Source: Macrostomum hystrix
Lineage: Eukaryota > Animalia > Platyhelminthes
Direction of reading: 5' to 3'
DNA length: 64,000 nucleotides
NCBI GenBank assembly: GCA_950097015.1
Contig: CATNEN010000038.1
Location: 30,256,001 to 30,320,000 of the forward strand
Part shown: positions 9,794-53,419 of the stretch, one piece after another
How the letters are laid out: the number at the start of each line of letters is the position of its first letter
How positions within the stretch are numbered: position 1 is the stretch's first letter
Notes under the pieces: generated by a model
What the model was told of the DNA's origin: nothing
Seen by the model: the letters and a program-made list of their open reading frames with translations, nothing else
Database searches by the model: none
Translations under genes and position numbers: made by a program

Positions 9794-9905
9794 CTGCTGA
9801 ACAGATCGATATTGAAGAACACGTATTCGCCGTTGATGAAGCCGAGTTCGTGAGCCTTGATCATGATCTCCCGTACAGTGTCAGGGTCGGCGCATAGGAC
9901 GACAA
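9794..9905 (-). CDS. Receptor guanylyl cyclase constant exon C1 (first shared exon; not in ORF track)
   Basis: cctattcag|TT acceptor (phase 1), AGCAG|gtgaga donor (phase 2); 112 nt; xVVLCADPDTVREIMIKAHELGFINGEYVFFNIDLFS, homologous to NPR 'VIYIC...DYVFF.LD.F'. Confidence 0.93.
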
Positions 9906-10229
9906 CTGAATAGGAAGAAAATTAGGAATTTTGAGATTTTGTTGGGGATTTTTTCGTGACAAGAGAAAAAATTCAGACGAAATTCAGGAACAGCTGTTTG
10001 TGAATGCTGTTCTTTTAATTAGTGATTCATCCAGGATATTGAATGAATAATTTTAGTTTTTAGAATCATTAAAATCTGAAGAAAAACAGAAGACACGAAT
10101 GTATAAATCATTCATAATAAAAAAATTGACTTTATTTCCACGAGTTGATTAAAAACTAAGACAAAGACTAAAATCTCTTTCAAGCCATGACCATGCTCCT
10201 TCTTACCCGTCCTCCATTATATCCTTAAC

Positions 10230-11398
10230 TCTTTCCCTGCCCTTCTCTTCCTGTCCTTCTCTTCCTGTCCTTCTCTCCCTGTCCTTCTCTCCCTGTCCTT
10301 CTCTCCCTGCCCTTCTCTCTTTGTCCTTCTCTCCCTGCCCTTCTCTTCCTGTCCTTCTCTCCCTGCCCTTCTCTCCCTGCCCTTCTCCATCTGTCCTTCT
10401 CTCCCTGTCCTTCTCTTCCTGTCCTTCTCTTCCTGTCCTTCTCTCCCTGTCCTTCTCTTCCTGTCCTTCTCTCCCTGCCCTTCTCTCTCTGCTCTTCTCT
10501 CTCTGTCCTTCTCTCCCTGCCCTTCTCCATCTGTCCTTCTCTCCCTGTCCTTCTCTCCCTGTCCTTCTCTTCCTGTCCTTCTCTTCCTGTCCTTCTCTCC
10601 CTGTCCTTCTCTTCCTGTCCATCTCTCTCTGTCCTTCTCTCTCTGCTCTTCTCTCTCTGTCCTTCTCTCCCTGCCCTTCTCTCTTTGTCCTTCTCTCCCT
10701 GCCCTTCTCTCCCTGTCCTTCTCTCCCTGTCCTTCTCCCCTGTCCTTCTCTCCCTGTCCTTCTCTCCCTGTCCATCTCTCTCTGTCCTTCTCTCTCTGCT
10801 CTTCTCTCCCTGTCCTTCTCTCCCTGCCCTTCTCTCTTTGTCCTTCTCTCCCTGCCCTTCTCTTCCTGTCCTTCTCTCCCTGCCCTTCTCTCTCTGTTCT
10901 TCTCTCCCTGCCCTTCTCTTCCTGTCCTTCTCTTCCTGTCCTTCTCTCCCTGCCCTTCTCTCTCTGTTCTTCTCTCCCTGCCCTTCTCTCCCTGTCCTTC
11001 TCTCCCTGTCCTTCTCTCCCTGTCCTTCTCCCCTGTCCTTCTCTCCCTGTCCTTCTCTCCCTGTCCATCTCTCTCTGTCCTTCTCTCTCTGCTCTTCTCT
11101 CTCTGTCCTTCTCTCCCTGCCCTTCTCTCTTTGTCTCTCTCTCTTCTCTCTGACCTTCTCTCCCTGTCCTTCTCTCCCTGTCCTTCTCTCCCTGTCCTTC
11201 TCTCCCTGCCCTTCTCTCTTTGTCCTTCTCTCCCTGCCCTTCTCTTCCTGTCCTTCTCTCCCTGTCCTTCTCTTCCTGTCCTTCTCTTCCTGTCCTTCTC
11301 TCCCTGCCCTTCTCTCTTTGTCCTTCTCTCCCTGCCCTTCTCTCCCTGTCCTTCTCTCCCTGCCCTTCTCTCCCTGTCCTTCTCTTCCTGTCCTTCTC
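10230..11398. repeat. 15-bp pyrimidine-rich minisatellite (CCTGTCCTTCTCTCC-like)
   Basis: Direct tandem repeat. Confidence 0.95.
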
Positions 11399-12122
11399 AT
11401 TATAACCTTTCGCACTTGACTTCAATTCCGCGCCAGCAAGCGGACGAAGCACATTTCCTAAATGGAAAGAAAAGTACAAATCAGAGGCACAGCCTTTGAC
11501 ATTCTGTTTGGGCCTGTCCGACAAAATTGAAATCAGGCACTACAGCCCCAAGGCATGTTGCCATGCAGCCAAAATGGGAAAAGAAAAAAGATGTTATATA
11601 ATGGAATTTGATTGGACGAGGTGAGAAATGAGAAAATTGAAAAGGCAGCTCAGAATGGAATGCAAACTCTTATTCCAAATGTACCCCGCTGTGTGTCATC
11701 CATGAATATGACATTGAAGAGTGTCTATGTACTCACATGTACTCGTATTAGAGTAGTATAGAGTCTCATCCTAACTAGCTTTTCTTTCACACTAAGGCGT
11801 CACTGAGCCTATAGGAAGCTGCTAAGATTATGCTACTTAAATCCGATAGTACGAGAATATAATGGGCTTATGTCTGATGCAGCAGTTCTTAAAGAAAGTA
11901 AGGCTTTATTGGACACATACACAGCTTAGCAATAACCGCAAAGTCGGGAGGGCTGAAGGCTGTATTAAAGATGGGATGAAAAAGTAAAAGATTTTGAAAA
12001 TATTGATGTGAACATATTGTGAAGGCTACAAGTACAAATATTAACAGAATGAGAAGGAATTGAAATACCGCAGACTGCGTACGGCTGTTCAGTCCATGGA
12101 CTGGGGGGACGCTACACACGAT

Positions 12123-14080
12123 TGTTAGTGTGGCTGGGCCCTCGACATCAGCCAAAGCAAGTGCGATATATATTTATAAGAGAACAGGGTGGGTGGCAAC
12201 ATGTGCCATAGAGATAAAAGGACAAAGTTCGTCCGCATATACTCGTATATATATAAAGCAATGCCTGCAGTCACATCATCACCTCCCCTTTTTAGTTTGG
12301 TTAGGTGCGCTGCTGATCTGGTTCTCCAAGTTTCGAATAGCCCAGCCGTTGAGGTGGAATACCGCGGTTTGCTCTTGTACTGCGTCTCAGTGGCGCCGCC
12401 TCCTATGGTGTGCTTGACTCCGATTGGCGAACTGGACAGGCGAAATCAGTTTCCGTCAGTGGCTGTAGCTTCCTCAAATATAGCCGGTTTCGCCGCAGTG
12501 TTCTGCCACTGGACAGCATGATGAGGTAGTCCCTGTGCTTGCCTACCTCTACCACTTTTCCCGGAAGCTCCCACCTTTTGTTGACTGGGTTCTGGACAAC
12601 GACTGTCGATCCACTTTGAATATTTGGCAGGGGTCGCTTGTTGCGGTCACTTGTGGCGCGCCGCCACAGTGTGTTGCATTTTTAGCGCCTTTGTCTCCAT
12701 TTCTGATACCGTCTTTTGCCATTCTAGGGAAAAGCTTTTTCGGTGTGCCGGTAGAGAATCCCGAGCTGGGTGGCCAAAGAGAAGAACCGATGGGATTCTG
12801 CCATCATACATACATACATCATACATTTTGGCGTGAAGCGTCTGTGTGTAATGCCGTTGGCTTACTTTATGGTAATATGCCAGTGATGGTACTTGTGAAA
12901 GACGACGTCGAGCTTCTTGGTGGTCTTTGTCCCATGAGAATATGTTCTTGCTGCTTAGAAGAGGTCTTAAGGGGCCAGTTATTTCTGCCATTTTGTCTGT
13001 AAATGGTCCCACCTAGTCCCATGAATGAACGAAGATCGGTAATGTTGGTTGGCTGAGGGAATTTGGATATAGTCTTTGTCAAGTTCGGGTCGATTTCGTA
13101 GCCATTCTTAGATAGCTTGATGAAGCCAGCAAAGTTGACACTTTTCTTTGCGAAGGCATTAAAGCACGTTTTGTCTTTCGCCGGACAGGTGGACCTGGGA
13201 TGATTGGACTTCCCACAGAATCCGCAAGTTATATTTGGACATAGGCGTGGCGAGGCGTGGCGTGTCGTAGAGGCGCCACTCGTGCTCCTGTACTGAACTC
13301 CGGGCTTTGCCTTCCACGTGACTCTAGCCGGTGACTTGTTCGACGAATCTTTGATGCTGTTCAAGCTTGTGCAGCTAATCTCGTCTCTCTGCTTCACTGA
13401 CGCTTCTTCAGCCCTGCATATCTGAAGTGCTTCCGCCAAGGTTAAATGTGGCTCTGCCAGTAGTTTTCTTCACTGCTTCAGGGCTGTTGACTCCCAGGAC
13501 GATCTTGTCGCGCAACAGGTCATCAGAGTGCTCACAAAATCTACAGGTTCTCATGAGGTCTCTCAATGCCAAGACATATTCGTTGAAAGGCTCACCATCC
13601 TTCTGATGTCTCTTCCAGAATCGATTGCGCTCCACAATGATGTTCACGTGTCCTAATAGATGCTCTCTGAGCGAGGCAATCACGACCTCCGGGTCTTTAA
13701 ATTCCACTTCCGTCAGTGGCAGATTCTTGTACTTGCTGAAGCTAGCTGAGGAGAAGGCATTTAGCATGCAAGCGCGTCGACTGACTTTCTTCTGCGCTGC
13801 TGTTGCGGCAGAGTCGCCCGCGAGGTTGTGGATGTTCAGCGCCTTGAAGTAGGCCTCCAGGGTAGCTTGCCACGCGTCAAAGTCATCTAGCGTGTCAGTC
13901 GCAAGATCCAGCCGAGGAATTTGGAGTCCGGGTAGGCTGACTTTGGCCGTTCCCGTATCCGCGGCGCTCCTTGTCGGTGGTGCCATTGAAGGAGACCTTG
14001 CTGGCGAAGTGGACATCCCGCTGAGATTTCCGCAGGGTCAAAAATTGCGTTGCGATGCCATGTTAGTGTGGCTGGGCCCT
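12123..14080 (-). mobile_element. Internally deleted Ty3/Gypsy LTR retrotransposon
   Basis: 3' LTR 12123-12281 (TG...CA) preceded by PPT AAAAAGGGGAGG; only the last 20 bp of the 5' LTR remain (14061-14080, identical to 12123-12142), followed by TGG-starting PBS; gag 13408-14016 frameshifted into CCHC knuckle CGFCGKSNHPRSTC; RT/RNaseH fragments (FPQPTNITDLRSFMGL, PLRPLLSSKNIFSW). Confidence 0.88.
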
Positions 14081-14397: not shown

Positions 14398-14820
14398 GCC
14401 TAACTTCCTCTCGCATGCAGCGAAACACTTCGCTCTGAAAGTGCTCATTAGTGGAACTATACGGCCTAGTTCGGACAATGTAACGCAGATCGTGGCCAAA
14501 TCGTTTCTCTATTGATGTGCCCAATAGCCGGCTGAAAGTCACTCTAGTCTCGTCTTTCTGATTTGAGAACGTCTTGTCGTCATCCGGCACGTGCACAACC
14601 AGCAGATTCTGATGCGGTCTGGGTGGCCATTTGTAGTACTTAAATATGGCCACTAACATGCCTTCTAGGTCTGCGTTAATGGGGCCTAGGCGGATCATGT
14701 TGAAGTATTCGTCTTTGTCTTCGAGGCTAGCCGTGCCGCCGGAGGTGATAATTGGTTTGCGGTACAGGTAGTATCGATTGTAGCGAGCCACAGCCGCGAG
14801 GCAGAATGTACAGAACGGAC
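14398..14820 (-). CDS. Receptor GC variable cassette V1, exon 2 (ANF-receptor N-terminal ligand-binding region)
   Basis: cgcgcag|GT acceptor (phase 1) gives GPFCTFCLAAVARY..KPIITSGG..IRLGP; donor AGG C|gtaaga (phase 1); 423 nt. Confidence 0.88.
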
Positions 14821-15700: not shown

Positions 15701-15816
15701 CCCGAAAAAAATTCTTAGACCATATAATATATTTTTGTTGGTTTTCAAAATCCTCTATGTTTCCGAACGGTACAAACAGTTATTTGAGGCTCAAACAATT
15801 AACACCATACACTCAC

Positions 15817-16120
15817 CAAGCATCAAGTCGACATCCTTCAGCAGCAGCAGAGCAATGACTGGCGCGTATTTGTAATCGCATTGGCTGTCATTGGCTATGA
15901 TGCGGATTCGAACCCCGGGCAGCATTTTGTCAAGACCGGCTGATCTCAGTGCGACATCGACAACAGGTTGAACTGCTTCCAAACTGACGCCGGGAACTCC
16001 GTGAAGCTTCGCCGGCAAGAATATTGCGATGGTTAAGCTGTCCTTGGAGCTGACTAATTGTGGCGGCAGCAACAGCAACAACAGCAGCAGCAGCAGCAAG
16101 CAGCCAAGTCTATTCGACAT
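15817..16120 (-). CDS. Receptor GC variable cassette V1, exon 1 (signal peptide + start of ectodomain)
   Basis: ATG at 16120, poly-Leu signal peptide, LTIAIFLP..ANDSQC..VDLML, donor G|gtgagt (phase 1); 304 nt. Confidence 0.9.
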
Positions 16121-22977: not shown

Positions 22978-23330
22978 CGGAGTACTGGGCGGCAATCTTT
23001 CTCCGAAAAGCGATCTCAAACTCTTCAGGCCGGCCAGAATCGCTGAGACTCATAAACTCAGCTTCAATACCGAATTTTTTTCTAACTCCGTTTAGATCGA
23101 CCATGTGCAGATTGCAGCCCCGGTTGGCGTAGCCGTGGGTTGCGCTGTACAGGCCAAAGAATTTTCGCCAACGATTTTTTAGAAATATCGTTCTCAGAAT
23201 CGAGGCCATCAACTCGGCGCAGTTGAAACTGACTCGGACAAAGATGTTGTTGATGTACTGCACCTTGCTAGAGTCTCTGAAGTCAGCTTCAACAGATCCA
23301 ATGCTCACGACTGGCTTGTTCCATTTGGCT
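22978..23330 (-). CDS. Receptor GC variable cassette V2, exon 2
   Basis: aatttcag|A acceptor (phase 2) gives GAKWNKPVVSIGSVEADF..FVRV..NRWRK; donor TCC G|gtgaga (phase 1); 353 nt. Confidence 0.87.
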
Positions 23331-24217: not shown

Positions 24218-24615
24218 CCCGAGTACTGGACAATCTGACTCGAGCTCTCAGGACAAGCCAGGCCGACAAATCCATCGACGGCTCCCTTGTAGAAACTTTC
24301 CATAGCCGGCAGGGCCGCCAGATTTGAGCAGGTTGAGTTCACGAAGCTGATCTGCAGCTGAAACTGCTCAGTGAGGTTCAGGTGTCGCAGAGTATCCTGA
24401 ACATACGACTGACTGGGCTGGATGAGTTTGGCGCTGAATTGGTGCGTCGTGTTGAATGGCAACAGCGCCAGCAGGCGGTACTTCAACGCAGCGGACGGAA
24501 TGTACAAGCTAGTACTGCTAGCCAACCCTAACAGCAGCCTGGTAACCATTATCCAGCTAAAGTACATTCTTATTCTATATAGATTGAGAGTGTAAAGACA
24601 ACTAAGGCTGTTCAT
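24218..24615 (-). CDS. Receptor GC variable cassette V2, exon 1 (start may instead be Met at 24567 or 24549)
   Basis: Hydrophobic leader, LLALLPFNTTHQFS..FVNSTCS..VDGFVGLACPES; donor TCG GG|gtgagt (phase 2) matches the exon-2 acceptor phase. Confidence 0.85.
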
Positions 24616-34771: not shown

Positions 34772-36605
34772 ATAGCTTCGATTCTGATCTAGGTCTCAGC
34801 TTCGATTCTGATCTAGGTCTCAGCTTCGATTCTGATCTAGGTCTCAGCTTCGATTCTGATCTAGGTCTCAGCTTCGATTCTGATCTAGGTCTCTAGCTTC
34901 GATTCTGATCTAGGTCTCAGCTTCGATTCTGATCTAGGTCTTTAGCTTCGATTCTGATCTAGGTTTCTAGCTTCGATTCTGATCTAGGTCTCTAGCTTCG
35001 ATTCTGGTCTAGGTCTCAGCTTCGATTCTGGTCTAGGTCTCAGCTTCGATTCTGATCTAGGTCTCTAGCTTCGATTCTGATCTAGGTCTCTAGCTTCGAT
35101 TCTGATCTAGGTATCTAGCTTCGATTTTGATCTAGGTATCTAGCTTCGATTCTGATCTAGGTCTCAGCTTCGATTCTGATCTAGGTCTCTAGCTTCGATT
35201 CTGATCTAGGTCTCTAGCTTCGATTCTGATCTAGGTATCTAGCTTTGATTCTGATCTAGGTCTCTAGCTTGGATTCTGATCTAGGTCTCTAGCTTCGATT
35301 CTGGTCTAGGTCTCTAGCTTCGATTCTGATCTAGGTCTCTAGCTTCGATTCTAATCTAGGTCTCTAGCTTCGATTATGATCAAGGACTCTCCCTTCGATT
35401 CTGATCTAGGTCTCTAGCTTCGATTCTGATCTAGGTATCTAGCTTCGATTCTGATCTAGGTCTCCTGCTTCGATTCTGATCTAGGTCTCTAGCATCGATT
35501 CTGACCTAGGTCTCTAGCTTCGATTCTGATCTAGGTCTCAGCTTCGATTCTGATCTAGGTCTCAGCTTCGATTCTGATCTAGGTCTCTAGCTTCGATTCT
35601 GATCTAGGTCTCTAGCTTCGATTCTGATCTAGGTCTCTAGCTTCGATTCTGATCTAGGTATCTAGCTTCGATTCTGATATAGGTCTCAGCTTCGATTCTG
35701 ATCTAGGTCTCTAGCTTCGATTCTGATCAAGGTCTCTCCCTTCGATTCTGATCTAGGTCTCTAGCTTCGATTCTGATCTAGGTCTCTAGCTTCGATTCTG
35801 ATCTAGGTCTCTAGCTTCGATTATGATCAAGGACTCTCCCTTCGATTCTGATCTAGGTCTCTAGCTTCGATTCTGATCTAGGTCTCTAGCTTCGATTCTG
35901 ATCTAGGTCTCTAGCTTCGATTCTGATCTAGGTCTCCAGCTTCGATTCTGATCTAGGTCTCTAGCATCGATTCTGATCTAGGTCTCTAGCTTCGATTCTG
36001 ATCTAGGTCTCAGCTTCGATTCTGATCTAGGTCTCTAGCTTCGATTCTGATCTAGGTCTCTAGCTTCGATTCTGATCTTGGTCTCTAGCTTCGATTCTGA
36101 TCTAGGTATCTAGCTTCGATTCTGATATAGGTCTCAGCTTCGATTCTGATCTAGGTCTCTAGCTTCGATTCTGATCAAGGTCTCAGCTTCGATTCTGATC
36201 TAGATCTCAGCTTCGATTCTGATCAAGGTCTCTCCCTTCGATTCTGATCTAGGTCTCTAGCTTCGATTCTGATCTAGGTCTCTAGCTTCGATTCTGATCT
36301 AGGTCTCTAGCTTCGATTCTGATCTAGGTCTCTAGCTTCGATTCTGATCTAGGTCTCAGCTTCGATTCTGATCTAGGTCTCTAGCTTCGATTCTGATCTA
36401 GGTCTCAGCTTCGATTCTGATCCAGGTATCTAGCTTCGATTCTGATCTAGGTCTCTAGCTTCGATTCTGATCCAGGTCTCTAGCTTCGATTCTGATCTTG
36501 GTCTCTAGCTTCGATTCTGATCTAGGTCTCAGCTTCGATTCTGATCTAGGTCTCTAGCTTCGATTCTGATCTAGGTCTCTAGCTTCGATTCTGATCTAGG
36601 TATCT
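34772..36605. repeat. 24/25-bp minisatellite (AGCTTCGATTCTGATCTAGGTCTC[T])n
   Basis: Direct tandem repeat. Confidence 0.96.
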
Positions 36606-37751
36606 CCCTTCACATTTACTTCTTCTATAACATAAGCCTGTGGTTAATGTAATAAAGAAGTAGTAAAATAATAATCATCAGGGCTGAGTATAAATTGACA
36701 CCTCAAATTGAGTTCGGACTCTGAGTGACTGCATGCGGCTCAGAGTCCCACTCTGACGGGTTTGAGAATGCAATCAAAGCGCGACAAACAAATCGATGAA
36801 ATTTTCCTACTATCCTACTCTATCCTATCTTAGTTTCAAGTTTTTCCTATTTTAGGACTAGCGTGCCTGTGTAAAAAGGCATGGCGATAAGTACTATCTT
36901 GTTTATTTTGGCGTGCAAAAATGGCGTCGAAATTGAAAAGTTTATTAGTTTCTATGGGGATATAACAGTCGAGCTGTCGATTTAGAATCCCAAATATTAA
37001 ATCAAGTTGATTTCGTCGAAGGAGATTGCTCCAAGATCGGGACATTGGACACAGGAGGGTTGTCTGACATATACTCACTAGCATGAGGTGCAGTAAAATG
37101 AGTAGTGGATAGAAATTTAATTCATTAGCGGTGAGCACTTCTGTGAAGTTCTACTTAGTCCCACATCGTTGCTGGCAATGGCATTACTGGCTACTCAAAT
37201 TATTTGAATACAGATTTTTTCTGCACAAGACAATAACTTATCTTTTAATTTTCAGAATGTCAGAATCAGCCAGACAATATATGGAGCTGTCCGGACCGGA
37301 TGGCGTTATCAAACTTAAATGATTATTGTATTAGAAGCCTAGCTGGTTGTGACATAGACGTTTCGCGAGCACAGTTTCTAATAATTCAAATGGGCCGGCA
37401 GCTGGCCAGAAGGCGATGGAGGCATTCCATATTGTGCTTATAATAAGCCGTTTGTTTGCCAATCCGGCCAGAGTATTGTCTGCATTAACTGCAGCTTCTC
37501 TCTGCCACCCACCCCTTTCAATCTCCTGTGCATTCACACATGCCCCAGTGCTGTAGTGTTTAGGAGGCCATGCAGGCCGCTAGGGAGAGGGCCGCAGGAA
37601 ATTAAGAAATCAATGTCACTAACCAGCTGTCCCCAATATCGGTCCTTCGCATCTGCAGCGTCTGGCTTCCCCTGCAGTCCATTCCTTTCCTCCCACCTCT
37701 TATTTCTCTGTGTATAGCCGCGCCAGCTATTAAGCATGAATTCAGTCTCAC

Positions 37752-38559
37752 CTGAGAATTTAGTGGACACTCTTTCGTGCAGAATGCGCTGATAGAGCGA
37801 GGCTGTGCTCGAGTCGTTCTGCCGGCCCTCTTCAATCAGCGAGTCAACGTAGACGTATTCGTAGCGGAAGCTTGGCTCCAGCTTTAGCTGATGATCTAGA
37901 GCTTGCTGAATGAGCTTGCACTGCACAAAATCCAGATAATAGTGCGGCGGGCGCTTTGTCATCACATTGTTCATTGTCACATAGAACACACCGCTCCAGT
38001 GACCAAGTCGGCGAATAAAAGTTCTGAGCGCTTTAATGATTTCATCAGCCGTAGTGCCGATGCGTATCGTCTGCTTCATGTTGACCAGGTTGCTTGATAT
38101 GGCTCCAGTGGACACTACTGCGTCCGTTGGCTTCAGCATGTACTGCTGGACATTGTTCATTGGGTAGGAGCAGGGCACCCCGACGATGAATCTCGGCTCG
38201 AATCTCTCCAGACCGGTGCTGCGCTGGGCGCAGGTCAGATTGATGATCTGCTTCAGCGAGACATTGTGCTCGCAGCCGAAATCAACGTAGACCTCGTGCA
38301 AGTTTACTCTATTAGCTAGAGCCTGGCGTACTAAGCGGTGCTGCTTGGCCAGGTGAAAAACTGGCCTTAGCAACTGTATGGGACTCATCACCTCTAGCTG
38401 TGTGTCATAGTCGGATGCCAACACTAGAGCTGTGACATTGGCTGGCTCTTTGGTCAGACCCGGCGCTCCAGCTGCTGCGGGCCTCACTAAATTGTCAATA
38501 GAAGCAAGAGCAAGCAAAACAGCCGGAAGCAGCAACTGCCAGCTGTATCTCGGTGACAT
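37752..38559 (-). CDS. Receptor GC variable cassette V3 (single exon)
   Basis: ATG + signal peptide MSPRYSWQLLLPAVLLALAS; VTALVLA..YVDFGC..FIVGVPCSY..VVSTGA..IRIG..W; donor TCA G|gtgaga (phase 1); 808 nt = 269 codons + 1. Confidence 0.87.
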
Positions 38560-39199
38560 TAAGTTAAGATTTGTATTTGAAATATTGAATACTGAGTCTT
38601 TTTTGATAAATTAAAATAAATTCTAGAAAAATTAGTCTTTTTTAGGATTGCGTGCACCAAAGATACAGCTAGATTTATAGCGTTATAGTCCTCAACCGAT
38701 CTCAACTTTGTGAGCGGGGGGCTGCTCACACATACGCTCTCTTTCACTCTTTCCCTCTCCTTTCTTCTGGATGACTTCTGGGGTACATGAAGCCCTCCCC
38801 AGCAAGGCTGAGAGCCAATGGGAGTGACCGGTCTACACACAAGACCACGCCAGCGCAGTTCAGTATACTCGCAAAGCAAGAGTGACGTGAAATCGGATTA
38901 GACTAGTGAACTCGGTTACTAAGGCGGTGATCGTTACATCAGTGACACAAAAAATCATCGTCCGGTTTTCGGTGTGGCTCCGATAGGCCCATAGCAATTG
39001 ACATTCGCACACATTGAAGATTCTACGCTATTAAAACACGCTCAAACACTCGTAGACAAAAAGAACTCAAATTATGCTTAGTTGATCAATATTGGAAGAA
39101 AATTTTGATCTTCGCCGATGCATTTGACGGATTACTAGATGCATTTGAATTATTTTATTAATAATAATAATTAATAATTGATTACACCTGCCCAATTGG

Positions 39200-39473
39200 G
39201 TCAGATGTGCAGCCGACAGCACAGCCCCGCAGCTAATGCGTGGCGCACCTGATGGCTGTGTACGGCTGTTCAGTCCATGGACGGGGGGGGACGCCACACC
39301 CACCTTCAATTACCCCAGCTAATGCTGGTACCCACTTCAGCTGGGTGAACTGAAGCACTACAGAGTTAAGTGTCTTGCTAAAGGACACAAATTATTTCAG
39401 TGGAGTCGGGAATCGAACCCCCGACCTTCAAGTTGCGAGTCCGACGCTCTAACCACCAGGCTACAACCCCTCC
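39200..39473 (-). mobile_element. tRNA-headed SINE family A (CORE-like central domain), near full-length copy
   Basis: A box TAGCCTGGTGG, B box GGTTCGATTCC, then GTGTCCTTTAGCAAGACACTTAAC..CACCCAGCTG..GGGTACC; related copies at 1-60, 7657-7900, 8175-8280, 12073-12122/14083-14157, 23919-24110. Confidence 0.82.
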
Positions 39474-40409
39474 CTAAGCTAAAACCTCTCCTTGTAATTA
39501 AAAATACGCTCAAATAGACAAAAAAGACCTCAAATTATGCATTAGTTGATCAATATTGAAAGATAATTTTGATCTTCGCCGATGCATTTGACGGATTAGT
39601 AGAGAATTAATAAAAATCTGATGTATTAGCTGAATTATTGTATTGCAGCATCGGATTTGGGAGACACACCCCAATTTTCATGCAAGCAGAGCAGCAATTT
39701 TCTGTGCATCTTTTCTGCTATGCTTTTGTGCTGAAAGAACGCAAGAACTTGAATTTGCATGGAGTGAGGCTGTGTGTCCTGTAATTTAGGCGGCATCTGT
39801 CAGGCCTCACTAATTTGAGCACACCCTTTCTAGTCTGCGGCCCTGTTGACTTAGACCCTGCAGATGATGTGACTAATATTTTCTAGGCTTTCTGGCCCGA
39901 AGCGCAGGACTCTGAAAAATGTAAAAAGACAGACCTTATCCTTATTTGAGTAGGATCCTAGCTTACTCGGACATTGAGTAGTATGACACAGAAATTCATA
40001 CTGCTTCTAATGGTTCCTCTCGTTTTACCTGGCGCGTGCTCGCGCCAGAGCCATTTGCAGCCAAAACTATGGGTTCTAGTGTCAGAGATCGAAAAATGTA
40101 AAATGAAAAATTAGCAAGGTTCTAAATATTCTACAGTTGTAAATCATGATCCCGTTTTATGCCCACGTTTGAGCTGAATCAAATTCCTCAAACAGTTGAC
40201 AAATTGTCAAGAGACGTCGTTTTCTGTTTCGCATTTGTGAAGAATCAACAAGAGTTGATTTACGAAAATCGCTGCAATTTACGAGCTTAAAACTAAAACT
40301 TTATAAAGTTAACTGTGCTACTAAGTCTTCCAGAGAGACAATCTAATAGTTTAATCTAAACATGCGAAAAAAATTGGATTTGACTTGGTTAAAAATTTTC
40401 ACTCTAAGC

Positions 40410-40972
40410 CAGGGATAGGCAAACTTATTTGCTGGCGGGCCAAAGAGAGTACCTAAAAGACGACAGCGGGCCGCATTGACTGTATAAATATGAAATAGGG
40501 GAGAGATGAGACACGGGAGAGATTAGACACGGGAGAGATTAGATACGGGAGAGATGAGACACAGAAGAGATGAGACACGGGAGAGATTAGACACGGGAGA
40601 GATAAGACACGGGAGAGATGAGACACGGGAGAGATTAGACACGGGAGAGATGAGACACAGGAGAGATTAGACACGGGAGAGATAAGACACAGGAGAGATT
40701 AGACACGGGAGAGATGAGACACAGGAGAGATTAGACACGGGAGAGATAAGACACAGGAGAGATTAGACACGGGAGAGATGAGACACGGGAGAGATGAGAC
40801 ACGGGAGAGATGAGACACGGGAGAGATGAGACACGGGAGAGATGAGACACGGGAGAGATTAGACACGGGAGAGATGAAACAGGACACTGTAGATGTCAGA
40901 AGGGGCAACGGGCCGGATTTGGGAGCTTCGAGGGCCGCATCTGGCCCGCGGGCCGTGGTTTGCCGACCCCTG
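40410..40972. mobile_element. hAT-Charlie-type non-autonomous DNA transposon with internal 16-bp minisatellite, copy 1
   Basis: TIRs CAGGGATAGGCAAA ... TTTGCCGACCCCTG; exact 8-bp TSD CTCTAAGC (40402-40409 and 40973-40980). Confidence 0.9.
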
Positions 40973-43900
40973 CTCTAAGCAGACGGTGGTGGCAGCGGTG
41001 GGATCGAATCTATGTGAATTTGATTGATAGCTTACAACTTGATAGTTAGCTTCCGTCATACTTTTGTGAGTAAAACGGCTAGTTATTGGATGGGAATTTA
41101 CCACTATACTTATTTTACCTAAAAAGGCTTCTTTACTGAAAGCAGAATTTTAGTGTTGATTTGTAAAGAGGCAGTAAAATAGCGATACATCCAAACTAGC
41201 CTTAACTGTGGGGTTTAGCTGTGGCCTACTACAATAGTACAACCTTTCACATAACGAAGCAAATATCACATCACATTTTATGGTTCCTTCAGCTGCAGAA
41301 AATGGAATATTTCTTATGAATAATAACAAGAAACGACAAATGCCTTCTAAGCAAATACTCTAGAACAGCTTATAATGGAGTATTGTGTGAAGTTGCGATT
41401 GAAGAGAATGCATAGAAAATACGAAAAGATAGCTAAGCCTTCTGATTATCTGAAAGGCCTGAGAAGATAATCAGCGCATATAACTCGCACAGTTGTTGCT
41501 TTCCCACAATTGAGAAAACCTGCAGTTGGGTCACTGCATGGCCACGCATTTTGCTTGTCCAGCTTTGCAGCACGAAAAAGAAATACAGAATGGCTTTCTG
41601 AATACAAGAGCTTAGCTGAATAATTAGAGGAAGTTTAGTGGGGCGAAACTAGAGGGAGACTTGCAAACCTCTAATTGAGGAAAAGGCTCAATTAAAATTT
41701 TGCCACATCATGTTGGAGTCTGTAGTTAAACAACGGAGCAGTCAACACGACTGCTCTTTGCTATACTATATTCTCACCTGCGATGGCGTCACAAAGCTGC
41801 TAAGTAATGCGATGTTTGAGGTCACTAAGTATCTAAATATTCCCTCGAACAATCGCAGAATAAAGAATCTGCGATCCTCCATAAACATTACTGAAAGTAG
41901 TAATAAAGGCTTTAATGAAAACGTTTGATGAAAAGTTAATCTAGGCATTTTGAAAGTACGCTATAATTTAAGACTGTCTTAATGCATAGCAGTTTGCATT
42001 TGATTAAGTATAGAATAATACCCCCCTGATTTCGTTTCTTTGGCCTAGGAAAGGCTGAGGACGCGTTTCTTGGCCGAGGCGAAGCCGAGGCCCAGAAGCG
42101 CAATCCGAAGCCGTTCCAATGCCATAGACAACGAGTTCAGGGGGTATTATAGTATTTAATCCTAAAGCTTAGCCCGGCTCACGAGATTGCACTACTAAAA
42201 CTGTTTACAGCAACTGTGACCATAGACTATATGTTTAATGGGCCTAGGCCGTTAAATGACTGGCTTAGGCCAGTTAAATAATAAATACATAGAATTAATA
42301 GCCAAGCTGTGGATTAAATTTGGATAATTTGGATTCAATTCCAGAAGGAAAATTAAGGGACTGGTTGACATTCAGAGACTGTCTATGGTAAAAAATGAAT
42401 TACGAAATCAAACATTTGCTTTTTCGGAACCTAGATCACTTATCAAAAGACAATAGACCACTAGAACAGTAGTTAGGCAGTTAGGAATTCAAACCATTTG
42501 CCAATTATGAGCACGATATTCATCTAGACGAAGATGCAGTACCTTCAACAGATGACACCAGCCTACTATGGTGATCAAGCCTCAACATTGGACGAAGCTC
42601 AACTACTAGACTCCTTAATATGTCAACCAACCAGTCAACCCGGCATCAAAAATTGACGTCAAGCTGAATTTTTATGAACAAAAATTGTCAGGACGAATTT
42701 CCACCCTTCATCATTCTCATTATGTTGTTAAATTGTTAATCAAATGGTTTCTTGAGAGGCAGTTCCGTTAGTGCAGCAGGCGGTGTCAGTAAATTCATCA
42801 AAAAATACTTGTATCTAACGAGGAGCTTGCAGAATTGGACGCATATTTTCTTAAATAGAACGAAGGAGATACAGTAGGCAGCTCAGATGGATTACAGAAT
42901 GACGAATGTTTCTGTCAGTAACATGTCTAAGATTGATTGCCCAGCTAGGATAGAAAAAAGACATACGTTTAGGTACTTTTGTTCAAATATTTATTACTTG
43001 TCTATTAGTGGTTCTTAGAGCTGTCTAGTTGACGATTATTTCTGCATACATTTTTCTCTGAAATGCTTGGTTTCGACTAGAGGTAAGACAGAGGTAAGAG
43101 AAATTAAGGCCCACTTTCCAACTAAGTCAGGCTACATGCGGGTCAACAACAGTTGCTACCTGTTCCCACGAAAAAAACTTATCAAACCAGCGCCCTCAAA
43201 ACAGAAACAGAATTGAGGGCGACCTCACTAAGCTACGCTCATACGTAGCAGTAGTATGCTGCGAGTTTTATGCACCGGGCTGGCACTCGGCTATAGGTCA
43301 AGCTTTGAAATTTGTTATATATATATATAAATCAAGTAGGGAGGGGTTAAGTGGAACTCATATCAAATCATTCTTAGTAATGAACGATTAGATATTGATA
43401 CTAGAGGTCCTATTCTCTCAAGCGAAGCGGATGAGATCAAGATAGAGAGAGAGAGAGAGAGAGGAATAGAGCGCAGTGCCGATCGATAGAAAAACGTTCC
43501 CCATCCAGAGCTACTGATCACTGATTCCACCCATTCAAGGGGAAGCCGAGCTGAGCATTGATGAAAGGAGGCCGGGTCCGGCCTCAAGCGGTGAGTGTAT
43601 GCGACAGAGGACAAAATCCCCAAGGGAGTGGAAGTGACGCGGGCCACTTTTTTTCAGCTAGATATTCGGAGGTCGGTGGAGATGGAAGAGGGAACAACTG
43701 GTCCGGTAGTGAAGGCCAGTCTCTGACTGTTCTCTAGTGAAAACGGATTTCTGGTTGGCCAATTTTTTATGCAGCTTTCTAGAGTAGAACCAGCTGAGGC
43801 CTATCAAAGGAGAGGAACCTGAGTCTCCGCTGATCAAGGTTAAAGCCACGCTTTAAAATCCACGCTAATGTTAAATTTAAGATACAGACGAAAAAATATC

Positions 43901-44000
43901 TACTGAATCGAGTGAAGCCTATTCTACAGTGTGTCAGAGAAATCTGCTGTTTTCAAAGCTGGCTAATTCTGCTCGCCAACGGCACAGGCATCCACAGGCG

Positions 44001-44879
44001 ATGCGGCCCCTCATCACCACATCGACATACAGTGGCAGCTCAGGCGGCAGCGGGAATGGAAGCGAAGTCACCACCAGGGACATTTTGCTACACTTCTGCC
44101 ATGGCACCAGCCTTCGGGGTATTCCACGAATAGTTTCTAGTAGCGCTAATCGTCAGCTGCAGACACTGTGGATTGTCTTCGTGAGCTTGCTCATGTCGGC
44201 CTGTCTGGTCAACCTGTACTACATAATTCGCTTGTACTTTAACTACGACGTTGTCCAGCTGCCCATCCACACGATTCGCCCCGACGCGGCGTTTCCCTCG
44301 GTGACCATCTGCAACCAGAACCCGATTAGTCTGAGCGGGCATCGGCTGGTTCGCCAGAGGGGCTGGCCCGAGCCGCGCAGCTTCTTCCGTGCGGCCTGGC
44401 TTCACCAGAAACTCCTTCTAGAGCCAAATCAGGCTAATCTCACCAGCTACGAAACGACTCGCCTACGCATGTACATCAGCGGGCTGCTGTCATTCAATGC
44501 CTACTTCGCCAACCTGCCAGAGGGAGTCGATCCGCACGAGCTGGGTCAGTCGCGGCGCGATCTGATCCGCAGTTGCTACCTGCTGGTGCAGTCGGCCGCT
44601 GGACGGGAGCCGCCAGTCAAGAGTCCGAGCTGCGACCACCTGGGCTGGTGGCGACGCGTCTACGACCAGAACCGGCTCAACTGCTACACCTACACAGCGG
44701 ACAGGCAGCACGATACGGACGCCGTGGTTGAAATGGAGCTTCGAATATTTCTAGGCCACGAGTTGAACTTTGGCTGCTCAGACTGCGTGCTCATGGATGT
44801 CAACAGCCAGACCAGGGGCGCCACAGTTGTTCTGCATCCCAATGGCACTTATCCCGATGTGCAGCGCGATGGATTCACG
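44001..44879 (+). CDS. DEG/ENaC (amiloride-sensitive Na channel family, possibly FaNaC-like) exon 1
   Basis: ATG at 44001; pre-TM1 FCHGTSLRGIPRI, TM1 LWIVFVSLLMSACLVNLYYII, FPSVTICNQNP, NCYTY, GATVVLHPNGTYP; donor ACG|gtagga (phase 0); 293 codons. Confidence 0.92.
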
Positions 44880-45049
44880 GTAGGAGGCATCTAGACTCGA
44901 GCTAAGTTTAATGTTAGTGTTTATTCTCTCGCGGGCGAGTTCATGAGAGGTTAACGCGTTTGCTCCTCAGACCAATGTCCCCGAGTTCTTGCTAAACTGC
45001 ATAATATTCTTGCAACTACAGGCCTATGTGGCACATCAGTTTGAGACAC

Positions 45050-46924: not shown

Positions 46925-47890
46925 GTGTACCCTGGCACCCTGACGGAGGTGACCTTCGCCACACTGAACTGGACTAGACTTGGACCTCCATACGGCGAGT
47001 GCGACCCGAAGCCGCCAGCATATCTCAGCATCGCTAGCAGTGACCTCGGTCCATCGCCGCAGCGGCAGCCTCCGCGCAATCATCACAGGCAGCAGCTGTT
47101 CGGTTATACACGAAGAGCTTGCCACCGGCTTCACCAGCTGCGTCGAATTCAGGCCGCCTGCAACTGCAGCTTCGCCTTCCTACTGCCGCACGCTCCGTCT
47201 TCGACGTTGAAGCCAAACGTCTGCGAGAGCCTCGGCCCAGGCGGCATAATCGACTTCACAAGCGAAGGCTTGATGCGAGCGATCGGCAGAACCCGATGCG
47301 GCCTATTAGGAGCTTTCGCCAACTTTGACAGCAAATGTCGAGAGCCTTGCAATCACTACTCCTACCAGATTGCCACCACTCAGTCGCAATGGCCCAGAGA
47401 GTCTATGCTGATGCACATCTTCAACCAAGAGCTGGCCAGGGATGAGAAATTAAATTTGTTTAATCGGTCAGCCAATCTTAGCAGTCAAGAGATTGAGCTA
47501 GCCAAGCTTTACGATCAGGTGAAGCGAATTGCCAAGCTGAGTGAGGCAAATGCGAGTTCGCTACTTAAGAAACTGGGCCTCATCAGCGACAGCTTCATCA
47601 CTTTGAAAGTAACTAGAAAAGATTTCTCCGTAACTCAAATTGTTGAGAAGCCGGTACAGACTTTGGCATCGACTTTAAGTCAAGTTGGCGGACTGCTGTC
47701 AATGTGGATCGGGTTGACATTTCTCTGGATTGTGGAACTGCTAGACCTCGCCCTCCAGCTGCTGCAGCTGCTTTGCCGACGATTCAGTGGCAGCAAAGCC
47801 GATGATCGTTCGGCGGTAATCCTGCCAAGAATGCCGCGCCAAGTGCAGGAATTAACAGACGATGCAGCTGACCATGGCACACCGGTCTGA
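46925..47890 (+). CDS. DEG/ENaC exon 2 (Cys-rich thumb, TM2, C-terminus); full protein about 614 aa
   Basis: cccag|GTG acceptor (phase 0); PGT..RLGPPYGEC, YTRRAC..CNC, CREPC..Y, SQWP, LSQVGGLLSMWIGLTFLWIVELL; stop at 47890. Confidence 0.92.
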   Translation: MYPGTLTEVTFATLNWTRLGPPYGECDPKPPAYLSIASSDLGPSPQRQPPRNHHRQQLFGYTRRACHRLHQLRRIQAACNCSFAFLLPHAPSSTLKPNVCESLGPGGIIDFTSEGLMRAIGRTRCGLLGAFANFDSKCREPCNHYSYQIATTQSQWPRESMLMHIFNQELARDEKLNLFNRSANLSSQEIELAKLYDQVKRIAKLSEANASSLLKKLGLISDSFITLKVTRKDFSVTQIVEKPVQTLASTLSQVGGLLSMWIGLTFLWIVELLDLALQLLQLLCRRFSGSKADDRSAVILPRMPRQVQELTDDAADHGTPV

Positions 47891-48598: not shown

Positions 48599-48699
48599 CT
48601 AAAATTATTATTTTTTTGTTAATATTGGGCCTAACTGGGCAAGGTGTAATTTTTTACGAGTACGAGTATATACAGAAAATTTAGAAACAATTTACTCAC

Positions 48700-49115
48700 A
48701 GCTCTTTCCACTGCCAACTTTGGTGAGCAGCACCTGCTCGGCTGTCATGGAGCCGACTAGCTCGAAGACGCAGTCAACATTGGCCATCTTAGACTGTCTG
48801 GTGCACCAGTCCATGATGCTGGTGCAGATGGACCTGGACTCTGGAATGTCCCCCTCAGGTCTGTGGTTCGGCCATTTAAAGATCACAGCCACCCGGCGCC
48901 ACTCATTGTGCAGCATGAAACGCTCAATCATCTGGCCAGAGTCCTGGGCGGCGAACGGCGTCACCCGAATCAAAGTTGTCTCCGTCTTGTTGCTGAACGA
49001 ATGATGCACGGCGCCGGAGGTCAGGATGGGTATGGCGCTGTGGTAGGCAAACGGAATAAACTGCGTCATGGCGTAGTCTGTCAGCGGCCCGAAGAAGGCG
49101 TGAGCGCAGAGCCGG
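48700..49115 (-). CDS. Receptor GC variable cassette V4, exon 2
   Basis: ctgctcag|C acceptor (phase 2) gives GRLCAHAFFGPLTDYA..IPILTSGA..FSNK..TLIRV..EWRRVAVIF; donor AGC T|gtgagt (phase 1); 416 nt. Confidence 0.87.
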
Positions 49116-49234
49116 CTGAGCAGAGGTGAATGGTTTGGCGTGAGTTATCTCACTACTCAAATCGAGTAGTAAACAAGCAGTACAAACCTATTATTTGCTA
49201 TTAAAAACATTTCTGTTAATAATTTTTAACTGAC

Positions 49235-50298: not shown

Positions 50299-50709
50299 TA
50301 ACCAAGGATATTAGTAAATTGTCATGGGAAATTTTTGAGTTCTTAAGAAACGCTCGCCTTTTTCATTTTCTAATTGTGGAACAGACTTAGACCAGAAGAA
50401 TTTAAATTAATTAGCATAGATTTCGCTACTGCTTGAGCCTGTATATCACAGCATGTGTCTCCAAGGATAGCTGATCAAGCAAATTACGAACCAATCAATT
50501 TTATTAACGTGTGCGTCCCATATTTCACGACTTGCCTCAGGGGACGCCTGTACCCAAATTTGAAGATGAAATAATTGGAGAAGTTGTCATTTTGCATTTA
50601 TTGTGCGAGAAGGAAGATATGGGCACTGGCGCATTGTGACAGAACACAGTTGTGTAAACCTGTCTTTTAGACCGCTATCTGATAATAAGTGTTTTATGAA
50701 AGTCTAGAT

Positions 50710-52254: not shown

Positions 52255-52639
52255 GTCTAGATCTAGATGTCCTTGTCCTTGGACAGTTTTCTGTTTCCTC
52301 TAGCCCGAGATATCGTTAATTGTTATTCACATGATCAACTATTGGACATTGCCGGCTTGACATTGCTGGCTCGGGATGAGAATATTAATATTTTATACAG
52401 GCCACTTAATACCCCGACACTTCTCAATCAACAGGCCAATGTCAAGATGACACTCTTATAACTTGGCTTTAATCAGGAGAATGTTATTATCTTAACTAAT
52501 GATTAAGACATAATAGCATAGAGAATATTATGAAATAAGCATGAATATTATGGCAGTCATAAGATGATGTTCTGATAATATAGCTTCATACTTCTTTCGT
52601 AAACATTGCGGTTGATAAGACCTGATAATGGATTCGATA

Positions 52640-53050
52640 ATGGAACTGATAAATGGAACTGGGAATGGAACTGGGAATGGAACTGGGAATGGAACTGGGA
52701 ATGAAACTGGAAATGAAACTGAGAATGGACCTGGAAATGAAACTGGGAATGGAACTGGGAATGGAACTGAGAATTGAATTAGGAATGTAACTGAAAATGG
52801 AACTGGGAATGGAACTGAGTATGGAACTGAGAAGGGACCTGGGAATGGAACTGAGTATGGAAATGAGAATGGAACTGAGAATAAAACTGGGAATGGAACT
52901 TAGAATGGAACTAGTAATGGAACTGAGAATGGAACTGAGAATGAAACTGAGAATGAATCTGGGAATGGAACTGAGAATGAATCTGGGAATGGAACTGACA
53001 ACGGAACTGGGAATGGAACTGATAAATGGAATTAGGAATGGAACTGGGAA
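52640..53050. repeat. 12-bp minisatellite (GGAACTGGGAAT)n
   Basis: Direct tandem repeat. Confidence 0.9.
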
Positions 53051-53057
53051 CACTCAC

Positions 53058-53419
53058 CCTACAGATATATTATAGAAGTAAGGATTCATCCAGTAGTTGA
53101 GGTAGTACGGGTTGACAGTCTCTAGCCCAGGCTGGCCGTTTCTCTGCTCGGCAGGTACCTCCCTGTACCATTTGATGTCCTCGTAGATGATATTGGTGCG
53201 GGGCCATAGAAGCAGCGGATGAATCGCATCTTGCTGTCGAATTCTATTCCAAGCCAGTTGATAAGCCGGTTCTATCAAGGCCGCGTTCACATAGTAGGAG
53301 GTGGATCTGGGCGCTATGAGGTACAGGTCCAAGCGGTTAGCACATCGGTTATCAGGCGTGTTCTTGCCATCACAGCTCGATGCCAGCAATGTTAGCAATA
53401 GCGTAATTATTAATAGCAT
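53058..53419 (-). CDS. Receptor GC variable cassette V4, exon 1 (signal peptide)
   Basis: aaaATG, MLLIITLLLTLLASSCDG signal peptide, LYLIAP..YYVNAALIEPAYQLAW; donor GTA GG|gtgagt (phase 2); 362 nt. Confidence 0.85.

What the first reader, a model, noticed from the sequence alone, without database searches (positions are those of the whole stretch)
9794..53419. Variable/constant receptor guanylyl cyclase: four alternative ligand-binding N-termini spliced to one shared TM-KHD body
Seen in sequence: four separate minus-strand cassettes (V1 16120-15817 + 14820-14398; V2 24615-24218 + 23330-22978; V3 38559-37752; V4 53419-53058 + 49115-48700). Each encodes a signal peptide plus about 240-270 aa of ANF-receptor-like ectodomain. 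All four stop at the same homologous position with a GT donor in phase 1, and each joins the single phase-1 acceptor at 9905 in frame: ..EEVR-L-VVLCADPD, ..AQYS-V-VVLCADPD, ..TKFS-V-VVLCADPD, ..SGKS-F-VVLCADPD. I found no second copy of the constant exons between the cassettes. Established knowledge: clustered protocadherins and UGT1A use this alternative-promoter variable-exon/constant-exon design, and in NPR-A/NPR-C most hormone contacts and the dimer interface lie in the N-terminal part of the ectodomain. Inference: one locus yields at least 4 receptors with different ligand specificities but identical cGMP output. I am not aware of this architecture being described for receptor GCs, but I cannot search the literature.
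Basis: partly seen in the sequence, partly recalled or inferred. Interest (0 to 1): 0.95.

Follow-up and report, generated by a model that had tools for sequence, protein, structure and literature searches.

The report
Receptor cyclase gene with four swappable fronts
This flatworm gene for a hormone-receptor-type guanylyl cyclase carries four very different alternative front halves of its ligand-binding domain ahead of one shared signalling body, so one gene probably makes four receptors; the layout is real, old and at least partly expressed.

Summary
All four minus-strand cassettes are open and start with ATG plus a signal-peptide-like stretch. Each ends at a GT donor in phase 1. They lie upstream of a single phase-1 acceptor at 9905. 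The window and its flanks hold only one constant set (rest of the ectodomain, TM, kinase-homology and cyclase domains).

- **Paralogues:** the genome fits Macrostomum hystrix by size and contig count. The order V4-V3-V2-V1-C, with the same donor positions and phases, recurs at two paralogous loci, and as V4-V1-C at a third. Cassettes group by type, not by locus, so the array predates the gene duplications and every cassette has stayed coding.
- **RNA here:** RNA-like contigs from four runs of one study cover V3 as a clean exon. In two runs the alignment stops exactly at donor 37752. One contig carries 1005 more letters that do not lie on the stretch laid.
- **RNA in a relative:** an intronless 1677-nt transcript contig from a close relative encodes V3-type, then C1, then C2.
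- **Not shown:** the V2 and V4 junctions, the V3 acceptor at this locus, and whether cassettes start at their own promoters or at spliced-leader sites.
- **Other phyla:** oyster and ascarid gene models show the same sharp identity break at the C1 boundary. C. elegans gcy-28 has known promoter-specific isoforms.

This scan found the same layout earlier at other loci of this genome. I rate it a new variant of a known kind.

The parts
53058..53419 (-). V4 exon 1: ATG, signal-peptide-like start, donor gtgagt in phase 2
   Evidence: Orthologous exons with the same donor position and phase lie at C1, C8 and C12.
48700..49115 (-). V4 exon 2: ANF_receptor positions 52-126, donor gtgagt in phase 1
   Evidence: (27.3 bits, over the cut-off). 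Paralogues are 45-49% identical.
37752..38559 (-). V3: a single-exon cassette of 269 codons with donor gtgaga in phase 1. It is transcribed from at least 38582.
   Evidence: RNA-like contigs cover only 37752-38582, and alignments end exactly at 37752 in runs X1 and X2. V3-type copies occur only at C38, C1 and C8.
24218..24615 (-). V2 exon 1: ATG and signal-like start (a second Met lies at codon 17), donor gtgagt in phase 2
   Evidence: Paralogues at C1 and C8 are 49-55% identical with the same donor.
22978..23330 (-). V2 exon 2: donor gtgaga in phase 1
   Evidence: Genome-wide it occurs only at C38, C8 and C1.
15817..16120 (-). V1 exon 1: ATG, poly-Leu signal peptide, donor gtgagt in phase 1
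   Evidence: It is conserved at all four loci with the ending ...DLML|g gtgag.
14398..14820 (-). V1 exon 2: acceptor in phase 1, donor gtaaga in phase 1
   Evidence: All four loci end ...R(E/D)EVR. The M. lignano model P0002 joins V1-type to C1.
9794..9905 (-). C1: the first constant exon (VVLCADPDTV...NIDLFS), the only copy, acceptor in phase 1
   Evidence: It is 92-97% identical among the four loci.
6293..6865 (-). C2: second half of the ANF_receptor domain (positions 213-352). The 3' end is approximate.
5165..5915 (-). C3: transmembrane helix, juxtamembrane part and start of the kinase-homology domain. Ends are approximate.
   Evidence: (PK_Tyr_Ser-Thr, 44.5 bits)
4548..4748 (-). C4: kinase-homology domain exon. 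Ends are approximate.
128..289 (-). C5: kinase-homology domain exon. The remaining exons, cyclase domain included, lie left of the window at C38:30253862-30255893.

Best explanation
This is one receptor guanylyl cyclase gene of the natriuretic-peptide-receptor type, in the group that databases name gcy-28-like, Gyc32E or 'ANP receptor 1-like'. It is laid out as a variable/constant locus.

Four alternative 5' cassettes (V4, V3, V2, V1, in that order along the gene) each encode their own start codon and signal peptide. Each also encodes roughly the first 60% (240-270 residues) of the hormone-binding ectodomain.

A transcript that begins at one cassette is spliced from that cassette's phase-1 donor to the single phase-1 acceptor of C1 at 9905. 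C1 and the exons after it supply the rest of the ectodomain, the membrane helix, the kinase-homology domain and the cyclase. The gene therefore makes up to four receptors with different ligand-binding (and probably dimerising) fronts and the same cGMP output.

**Shown:** the anatomy; its conservation at paralogous loci; V3 as a clean exon in RNA-like contigs with use of its predicted donor; and a V3-type>C1 mRNA in a close relative.

**Inferred:** the V2 and V4 junctions; one cassette per transcript; how transcripts start (own promoter or spliced-leader site); and different ligands.
For: **Anatomy and frames:**

**Single constant set:**

**Conservation:**
- The order V4-V3-V2-V1-C1-C2, each cassette's own ATG and signal peptide, and identical donor positions and phases recur at C1:21.72-21.78 Mb and C8:0.69-0.76 Mb. 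The locus at C12:3.46-3.52 Mb keeps V4, V1 and C.
- Cassettes cluster by type, not by locus, with inter-type branches of about 2 changes per site.
- V2- and V3-type cassettes occur nowhere else in the genome.

**RNA:**
- Four runs give exon-only cover at 37752-38582.
- A 1532-nt contig (X1) and a 217-nt contig (X2) stop aligning exactly at donor 37752, with 1005 and 16 further letters that do not lie on the stretch.
- P0001 is a 489-aa protein on an intronless 1677-nt Logan contig. It has a V3-type part (72% identical to the C1-locus V3), then ...GNKLS-V-VVLCADPD, then C1 and C2.
- Its AlphaFold model (pLDDT 88.8) matches the NPR-A and NPR-C hormone-binding domains at TM 0.85-0.89.

**Other phyla:** identity jumps from about 35% to about 96% exactly at the C1 start, both between two oyster models and between two ascarid models. 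Many NCBI isoforms begin at or just before C1.
Against: - No read or contig was seen that joins V2 or V4 to C1.
- The letters beyond 37752 in the V3 contigs were not printed, so the acceptor at this locus is inferred.
- The V1e2 acceptor is also phase 1, so V3>V1e2 or V4>V1e2 would be in frame. One M. lignano gene model (P0003) chains V4 and V1.
- No shared upstream motif marks the cassettes.
- The C12 paralogue has lost V2 and V3 and has a shortened V4e2, so cassettes can be dispensable.
- Nothing tested bears on ligands.
Confidence: 0.82

Rival explanations
1. Same products, different start mechanism. One long primary transcript from upstream of V4 is cut down by spliced-leader trans-splicing at the 5' end of one cassette or another, rather than by four promoters.
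For: 10-20% of M. hystrix genes are SL trans-spliced, and up to about 1% have several SL sites. No shared promoter motif lies upstream of the cassettes. A cag lies 10 nt upstream of the furthest V3 contig end.
Against: No SL letters were seen on the V3 5' contig, which lies wholly on the genome (record 2). A TATAAAT lies about 90 nt upstream of that contig end. An opposite-strand channel gene sits between V4 and V3. None of these points is decisive.
Confidence: 0.25
2. Only V1 is used. V2-V4 are decaying relics of old duplications, or exons of no consequence.
For: V1 lies closest to C1. The M. lignano models P0002 and P0004 use V1. The C12 locus lacks V2 and V3.
Against: Frames of 250-269 codons remain open at two or three further loci, at only 27-55% identity, with start codon, signal peptide, donor position and phase all kept. 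V3 is covered in RNA-like contigs as a clean exon whose donor is used. A V3-type>C1 mRNA exists in a relative.
Confidence: 0.03
3. V2-V4 are separate small genes that encode secreted half-ectodomains and do not join the constant body.
For: Each has its own start codon and signal peptide. No V2 or V4 junction has been seen.
Against: All end at a conserved GT donor in the phase that C1 needs, not at a stop codon. Half of a two-lobed binding fold is unlikely to be stable on its own. The V3 contig runs on past the donor for 1005 letters, and P0001 joins V3-type to C1 and C2.
Confidence: 0.03
4. Cassettes are chained rather than exclusive, for example V4 or V3 spliced into V1 exon 2 and then to C1.
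For: The V1e2 acceptor is phase 1, like the V3 and V4 donors. M. lignano model P0003 reads V4e1+V4e2, then the last 21 residues of V1e1, then V1e2 and C1. The length of the X1 contig cannot exclude V3>V1e2.
Against: A chained product would duplicate the same part of the fold. P0003 is a genome-derived gene model, and such chaining is a typical prediction artefact. The transcript-derived P0001 goes straight from V3-type to C1.
Confidence: 0.06
5. Assembly artefact: several full-length paralogues were collapsed onto one constant region.
For: None was found.
Against: The same one-constant, several-cassette layout is assembled independently at three other loci on other contigs. The published assembly that fits by size and contig count is long-read based with low duplication. 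The cassettes are less than about 30% identical to one another, so they would not collapse.
Confidence: 0.01

Closest known systems
C. elegans gcy-28 receptor guanylyl cyclase isoforms (gcy-28.c, gcy-28.d)
   Same: It is a receptor guanylyl cyclase, and NCBI names mollusc relatives of this gene 'gcy-28-like'. Its 'splice isoforms' have their own promoters and different expression.c is broad.d is in AIA and a few other neurons (PMC9249223). It is listed among the few worm kinases with a functional role shown for a splice variant (PMC5290486). Ascarid relatives show the cassette break at the same boundary.
   Different: I could not read the primary papers (not held) or fetch the worm sequences. 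That the worm isoforms differ in the ectodomain front rests on my memory only. No paper in the library describes four full half-domain cassettes, their conservation across paralogues, or a variable/constant reading.
Clustered protocadherins and UGT1A (variable first exons, shared constant exons)
   Same: A tandem array of alternative 5' coding units, each with its own start codon and signal peptide, sits ahead of one set of constant exons. The variable part is the recognition part and the constant part is the signalling or catalytic part.
   Different: Three of the four cassettes have two exons, so internal acceptors lie in the path of upstream donors. No conserved promoter element was found. 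There are four cassettes rather than a dozen or more. The splice point lies inside a single folded domain, not between domains. Promoter choice is unproven, and spliced-leader trans-splicing is possible.
Vertebrate natriuretic peptide receptors NPR-A and NPR-C
   Same: The model of a V3-type ectodomain matches their hormone-binding domains best (TM 0.85-0.89, 26-29% identity). The domain order ANF_receptor, TM, KHD, cyclase is the same.
   Different: In vertebrates, as far as I know, different ligand specificities come from separate genes, not from alternative fronts of one gene.

Membership tests
Receptor (membrane) guanylyl cyclase, natriuretic-peptide-receptor type | Extracellular ANF_receptor (periplasmic-binding-protein type I) domain | tested here: met
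   Pfam PF01094 matches C2 (81 bits), C1 and V4e2, with weak collinear hits on the other cassettes. The model of a relative's V3-type+C1+C2 matches NPR-A and NPR-C.
Receptor (membrane) guanylyl cyclase, natriuretic-peptide-receptor type | Single transmembrane helix followed by a kinase-homology domain | tested here: met
   The ORF at 5157-5930 has a hydrophobic stretch (IAIYAVIVLLVLICVLTVLIVIIY), then PK_Tyr_Ser-Thr at 44.5 bits.
Receptor (membrane) guanylyl cyclase, natriuretic-peptide-receptor type | C-terminal class III cyclase domain | tested here: met
   PF00211 matches C38:30254635-30254910 and 30254113-30254310, just left of the window on the same strand. These are collinear with M. lignano P0002. 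Catalytic residues were not inspected.
gcy-28 / Gyc32E / 'ANP receptor 1-like' orthogroup | Closest relatives are members of that group | tested here: inconclusive
   The constant ectodomain part of P0001, the transcript-derived protein of a close relative, is 60-65% identical to mollusc 'ANP receptor 1-like' and 'gcy-28-like' proteins, and 51% identical to Pediculus 'Gyc32E'. No tree with C. elegans or Drosophila sequences was built.
Variable/constant gene cluster (protocadherin / UGT1A design) | Tandem alternative 5' coding units, each with its own start codon, ahead of one constant exon set | tested here: met
Variable/constant gene cluster (protocadherin / UGT1A design) | Each variable unit is spliced directly to the first constant exon | tested here: inconclusive
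   V3: its donor is used and the contig continues, but the acceptor was not seen. A V3-type>C1 mRNA exists in a relative. For V1 there are gene models only. For V2 and V4 there is no RNA evidence.
Variable/constant gene cluster (protocadherin / UGT1A design) | Each variable unit has its own promoter | not testable with these tools
   The V3 contigs reach 23 nt upstream of the ATG with no upstream exon. No TSS data are at hand, and SL trans-splicing is common in this genus.
Variable/constant gene cluster (protocadherin / UGT1A design) | Variable units are single exons without internal acceptors; protocadherins also share a conserved promoter element | tested here: not met
   V1, V2 and V4 have two exons each. 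No k-mer is shared upstream of the 14 cassettes beyond the level of control sequences.

The most novel reading that the evidence does not exclude
The variable/constant design is an old protostome, perhaps bilaterian, feature of this receptor guanylyl cyclase group, shared by flatworms, molluscs and nematodes (gcy-28). Cassette choice would give different cell types receptors with different ligands, and possibly different dimer partners, on one cGMP output. M. hystrix alone could then make up to 14 such receptors from four genes.
Probability: 0.4. Interest if true: 0.85.

Novelty: new variant of a known kind. Interest (0 to 1): 0.7.

Why it matters
Receptor guanylyl cyclases are usually thought of as one gene, one ligand-binding domain. 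Here the front 60% of that domain is exchangeable. It holds the region that in NPR-A, from memory, carries the dimer contact and the chloride site.

If the four fronts bind different ligands, one locus encodes a small receptor repertoire with a common output. The splice point also lies inside a folded domain, which constrains how the two halves co-evolve.

The same break in oyster and ascarid models hints that the poorly explained gcy-28 isoforms of C. elegans belong to a general, unrecognised design. That can be tested directly in a genetic model.

It also matters for annotation. Gene predictors chain or drop these cassettes, as M. lignano P0003 and the many NCBI isoforms that begin at C1 show.

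Tried and rejected
**Searches that came back empty**
- Two homologous-protein searches with V3 found nothing. One used V3 alone. The other used the 358-codon open frame, scoring residues 18-286, which widened the length range to 197-626 aa. No V3-containing protein of this species is in that collection in those sizes.
- Cassette HMMs against 262 fetched proteins did not sort mollusc, arthropod or nematode fronts into the flatworm V1-V4 types. The V4e2 profile simply scores best on nearly all of them. I therefore claim no cross-phylum orthology of cassette types.
- A k-mer search found no shared element upstream of the 14 cassettes above control level.
- Four paper searches for a variable/constant or alternative-first-exon receptor guanylyl cyclase found nothing relevant (one search gave only a database paper).

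**Tools and sources that were unavailable or limited**
- Tsunozaki 2008 and Shinkai 2011 are not held.

**Leads dropped**
- The mammalian NPR3 isoform pairs with unrelated fronts come from different species. I did not follow them up.

Exons were searched one by one, by reference.

Full report
**What is there**

The window is G000:C38:30256001-30320000. The genome has 220,453,370 bases in 42 contigs. That fits the published Macrostomum hystrix assembly, described as about 220 Mb in 42 contigs (PMC10468722). The closest named proteins are from Macrostomum lignano.

By length arithmetic:
- V1 is 304+423 nt.
- V2 is 398+353 nt.
- V3 is 808 nt.
- V4 is 362+416 nt.

All four end in phase 1 at gtgag or gtaag donors. 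C1 (9905-9794) follows the acceptor ttcctattcag in phase 1. Each cassette begins with ATG and a hydrophobic, signal-peptide-like stretch.

Pfam places the cassettes at ANF_receptor positions 2-131, weakly, with only V4e2 over the cut-off. C1 falls at positions 181-213 and C2 at 213-352. A TM-plus-kinase-homology exon follows. The cyclase domain lies just left of the window. Comparison with M. lignano P0002 gives this map of the constant exons:

| Exon | Window coordinates |
|---|---|
| C1 | 9905-9794 |
| C2 | 6865 to about 6293 |
| C3 | about 5915-5165 |
| C4 | about 4748-4548 |
| C5 | about 289-128 |
| four more | left of the window |

**One constant set, four cassettes**

tblastn with C1 and C2 finds one copy each in the window plus 10 kb on either side. 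Cassette HMMs find no fifth cassette in that span.

Upstream of V4 on the same strand lies another gene with BAH, Tudor and TNRC18-like SH3 domains (57318-60702). V4 is therefore most likely the first cassette.

**The strongest evidence: paralogous loci**

The genome holds three further genes with the same constant exon structure. I fetched 60-70 kb around each.

- The loci on contigs C1 (minus strand) and C8 (plus strand) carry V4e1, V4e2, V3, V2e1, V2e2, V1e1, V1e2, C1 and C2 in the same order.
- The C12 locus carries V4e1, a shortened V4e2, V1e1, V1e2, C1 and C2.

Identity to the window copy:

| Part | Amino-acid identity (%) |
|---|---|
| C1 | 92-97 |
| C2 | 62-77 |
| V1 | 39-59 |
| V2 | 49-55 |
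| V3 | 27-33 |
| V4 | 34-56 |

All cassettes at these loci, apart from the shortened V4e2 at C12, keep an open frame. All keep their own ATG with a signal-like start and a GT donor at the homologous residue in the same phase. For example, V1 ends ...REEVR|c gtaaga, V2 ends ...YS|g gt, V3 ends ...FS|g gtgag, and V4e1 ends ...SV|gg gt.

In a tree of the cassette sequences, V1, V2 and V3 form type-specific clades, split by branches of about two changes per site, and no cassette groups by locus. The V4 copies stay unresolved next to the V2 clade. V2- and V3-type sequences occur nowhere else in the genome.

The array therefore predates the duplication of the whole locus. Each cassette has since been kept as coding sequence with a phase-1 exit. 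This rules out chance, assembly collapse and simple decay.

**RNA evidence**

Four runs of one 2020 study hold V3 words at shares of 0.96, 0.85, 0.43 and 0.21. All are of the same coded organism and hold about 45-50 Mb of contigs each.

Laid on 36000-41999, their contigs cover 37752-38582 and nothing in the intron below or the 400 nt above, apart from repeats further up. The runs are not on record as RNA, but this exon-only cover is what RNA gives.

- In X1, a 1532-nt contig lies with 527 letters on 37752-38278.
- In X2, a 217-nt contig lies with 201 letters on 37752-37952.
- Both alignments stop exactly at the predicted donor, with no mismatches.
- The remaining 1005 and 16 letters lie elsewhere. 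The coherent reading is that they run on past the donor, because neighbouring contigs continue the exon upstream.

The loose letters at 37752 were not printed, so the acceptor is not seen. By length the contig could run through C1, C2 and into C3. It could also pass through V1e2, whose acceptor is phase 1 as well.

The 5' contig reaches 23 nt upstream of the ATG and lies wholly on the genome. No upstream exon or spliced leader was seen.

**A spliced V3-type mRNA in a relative**

A profile of C2 searched against 1.84 billion representatives returned P0001. This is a 489-aa protein known only from one Logan contig of 1677 nt, which is too short to hold an intron.

Its parts are:
- a start Met and signal peptide;
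- residues 15-262, V3-type, 72% identical to the C1-locus V3 and 32% to the window V3;
- the junction ...GNKLS-V-VVLCADPDTV...;
- C1, 100% identical to the C1-locus copy;
- C2, 96% identical to the C1-locus copy.

With a 54-row alignment, AlphaFold gives pLDDT 88.8 and pTM 0.87. The V/C joint falls at the start of strand 263-267. The best structural matches are the NPR-A and NPR-C hormone-binding domains, at TM 0.85-0.89 and 26-29% identity. A V3-type front plus the constant half therefore makes one complete natriuretic-peptide-receptor-type domain.

M. lignano P0002 is a V1-type model joined to C1. P0003 chains V4, a piece of V1e1, V1e2 and C. I take P0003 for a prediction artefact, but I cannot exclude that it is real.

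**Beyond flatworms**

The constant ectodomain part of P0001 is 60-65% identical to mollusc proteins named 'ANP receptor 1-like' or 'gcy-28-like'. It is about 51-57% identical to chelicerate, insect ('Gyc32E', Pediculus) and hemichordate proteins.

- Many NCBI isoforms start at a Met inside C1 or a few residues before it. Examples are Patella X3, Mya X4, C. virginica X8 and Liolophura X3. This suggests that the C1 start is an exon boundary there too, with alternative 5' exons spliced to it.
- Crassostrea virginica isoform X1 and a Magallana gigas protein are about 35% identical before the boundary and about 96% after it, switching exactly at VVLCASADS.
- Anisakis and Parascaris proteins do the same at VIILCASPDTV.

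The simplest reading is that different cassettes sit on orthologous constant bodies. Cassette HMMs did not sort foreign fronts into the flatworm types.

**Literature**

C. elegans gcy-28.c and gcy-28.d are called splice isoforms with their own promoters. The .c form is broadly expressed, and the .d form is in AIA and a few other neurons (PMC9249223). gcy-28 is one of five worm kinases with a functional role shown for a splice variant (PMC5290486). That these isoforms differ in the ectodomain front is from my memory only, because the primary papers are not held. Four searches found no paper describing a variable/constant receptor guanylyl cyclase.

**Mechanism and open points**

Most likely a transcript starts at one cassette and its phase-1 donor joins C1.

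How transcripts start is open. There is a TATAAAT about 90 nt above the V3 contig end. However, 10-20% of M. hystrix genes are SL trans-spliced, and no shared upstream motif exists.

It is also unexplained how the donors of V4, V3 and V2 pass over the internal acceptors of V2e2 (phase 2) and V1e2 (phase 1). P0001 shows that a V3-type donor does so in a relative.

From the sequences alone, the motif around the conserved Cys near the first exon junction differs by cassette: GPFC in V1, GLAC in V2, GVPC in V3 and GPLT in V4. From memory, this is the region that in NPR-A carries a disulphide and the chloride site. Different ligand or dimer properties are therefore plausible but untested.

**Standing and limits**

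This scan found the same layout earlier at other loci of this genome (notes s1-306090, s1-849053 and s1-849033). I re-derived the paralogue layout and part of the mollusc claim myself.

**Verdict**

The feature is real, conserved and at least partly expressed. It is a new variant of a known kind: alternative first coding units on a constant body, with a likely counterpart in gcy-28. Confidence is 0.82 for the architecture producing alternative receptors, and about 0.5 that the fronts differ in ligand.

Noticed in passing
window 43929-44891 and 46925-47887 (+): Two long open frames match the amiloride-sensitive sodium channel family (PF00858, positions 1-249 and 284-454). This is an opposite-strand DEG/ENaC-type channel gene nested between V4e2 and V3, that is, inside the intron of a V4-initiated transcript.
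   Followed up: partly
window 57318-60702 (-): This is the upstream neighbour on the same strand, with BAHCC1-like Tudor, BAH and TNRC18-like SH3 domains. It probably marks the 5' limit of the cyclase locus.
   Followed up: partly
window 40499-40881: A 16-nt tandem repeat (GGGAGAGATGAGACAC, about 24 copies) attracts hundreds of short RNA-run contigs, with summed depth in the tens of thousands. A second high-depth patch lies at 39200-39600. It is probably a dispersed, transcribed repeat rather than local expression.
   Followed up: partly
window 12647-14016 (-): Overlapping ORFs of 121-202 aa look like retroelement Gag (my impression from the sequence; no Pfam hit) and lie in the V1-C1 intron.
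   Followed up: partly
window 8858-9780, 10203-11524, 1895-4220: Long minisatellite arrays fill the introns of the constant part: a repeat of roughly 20 nt (gttagacattgggatctacct-like), a GA-rich array that reads as (R/E/G/K)-rich ORFs, and two others. They produce long spurious ORFs on both strands.
   Followed up: no
G000:C12:3490034-3492298 (L021): The C12 paralogue has no V2 or V3. Its V4e2 matches only residues 1-80 before the frame closes, so this locus seems to be losing cassettes.
   Followed up: partly
P0003 (M. lignano A0A1I8JKT3): This public gene model strings V4e1+V4e2, the last 21 residues of V1e1, V1e2 and the constant part into one protein. It is either an annotation artefact typical of such loci or a real chained splice form.
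   Followed up: partly
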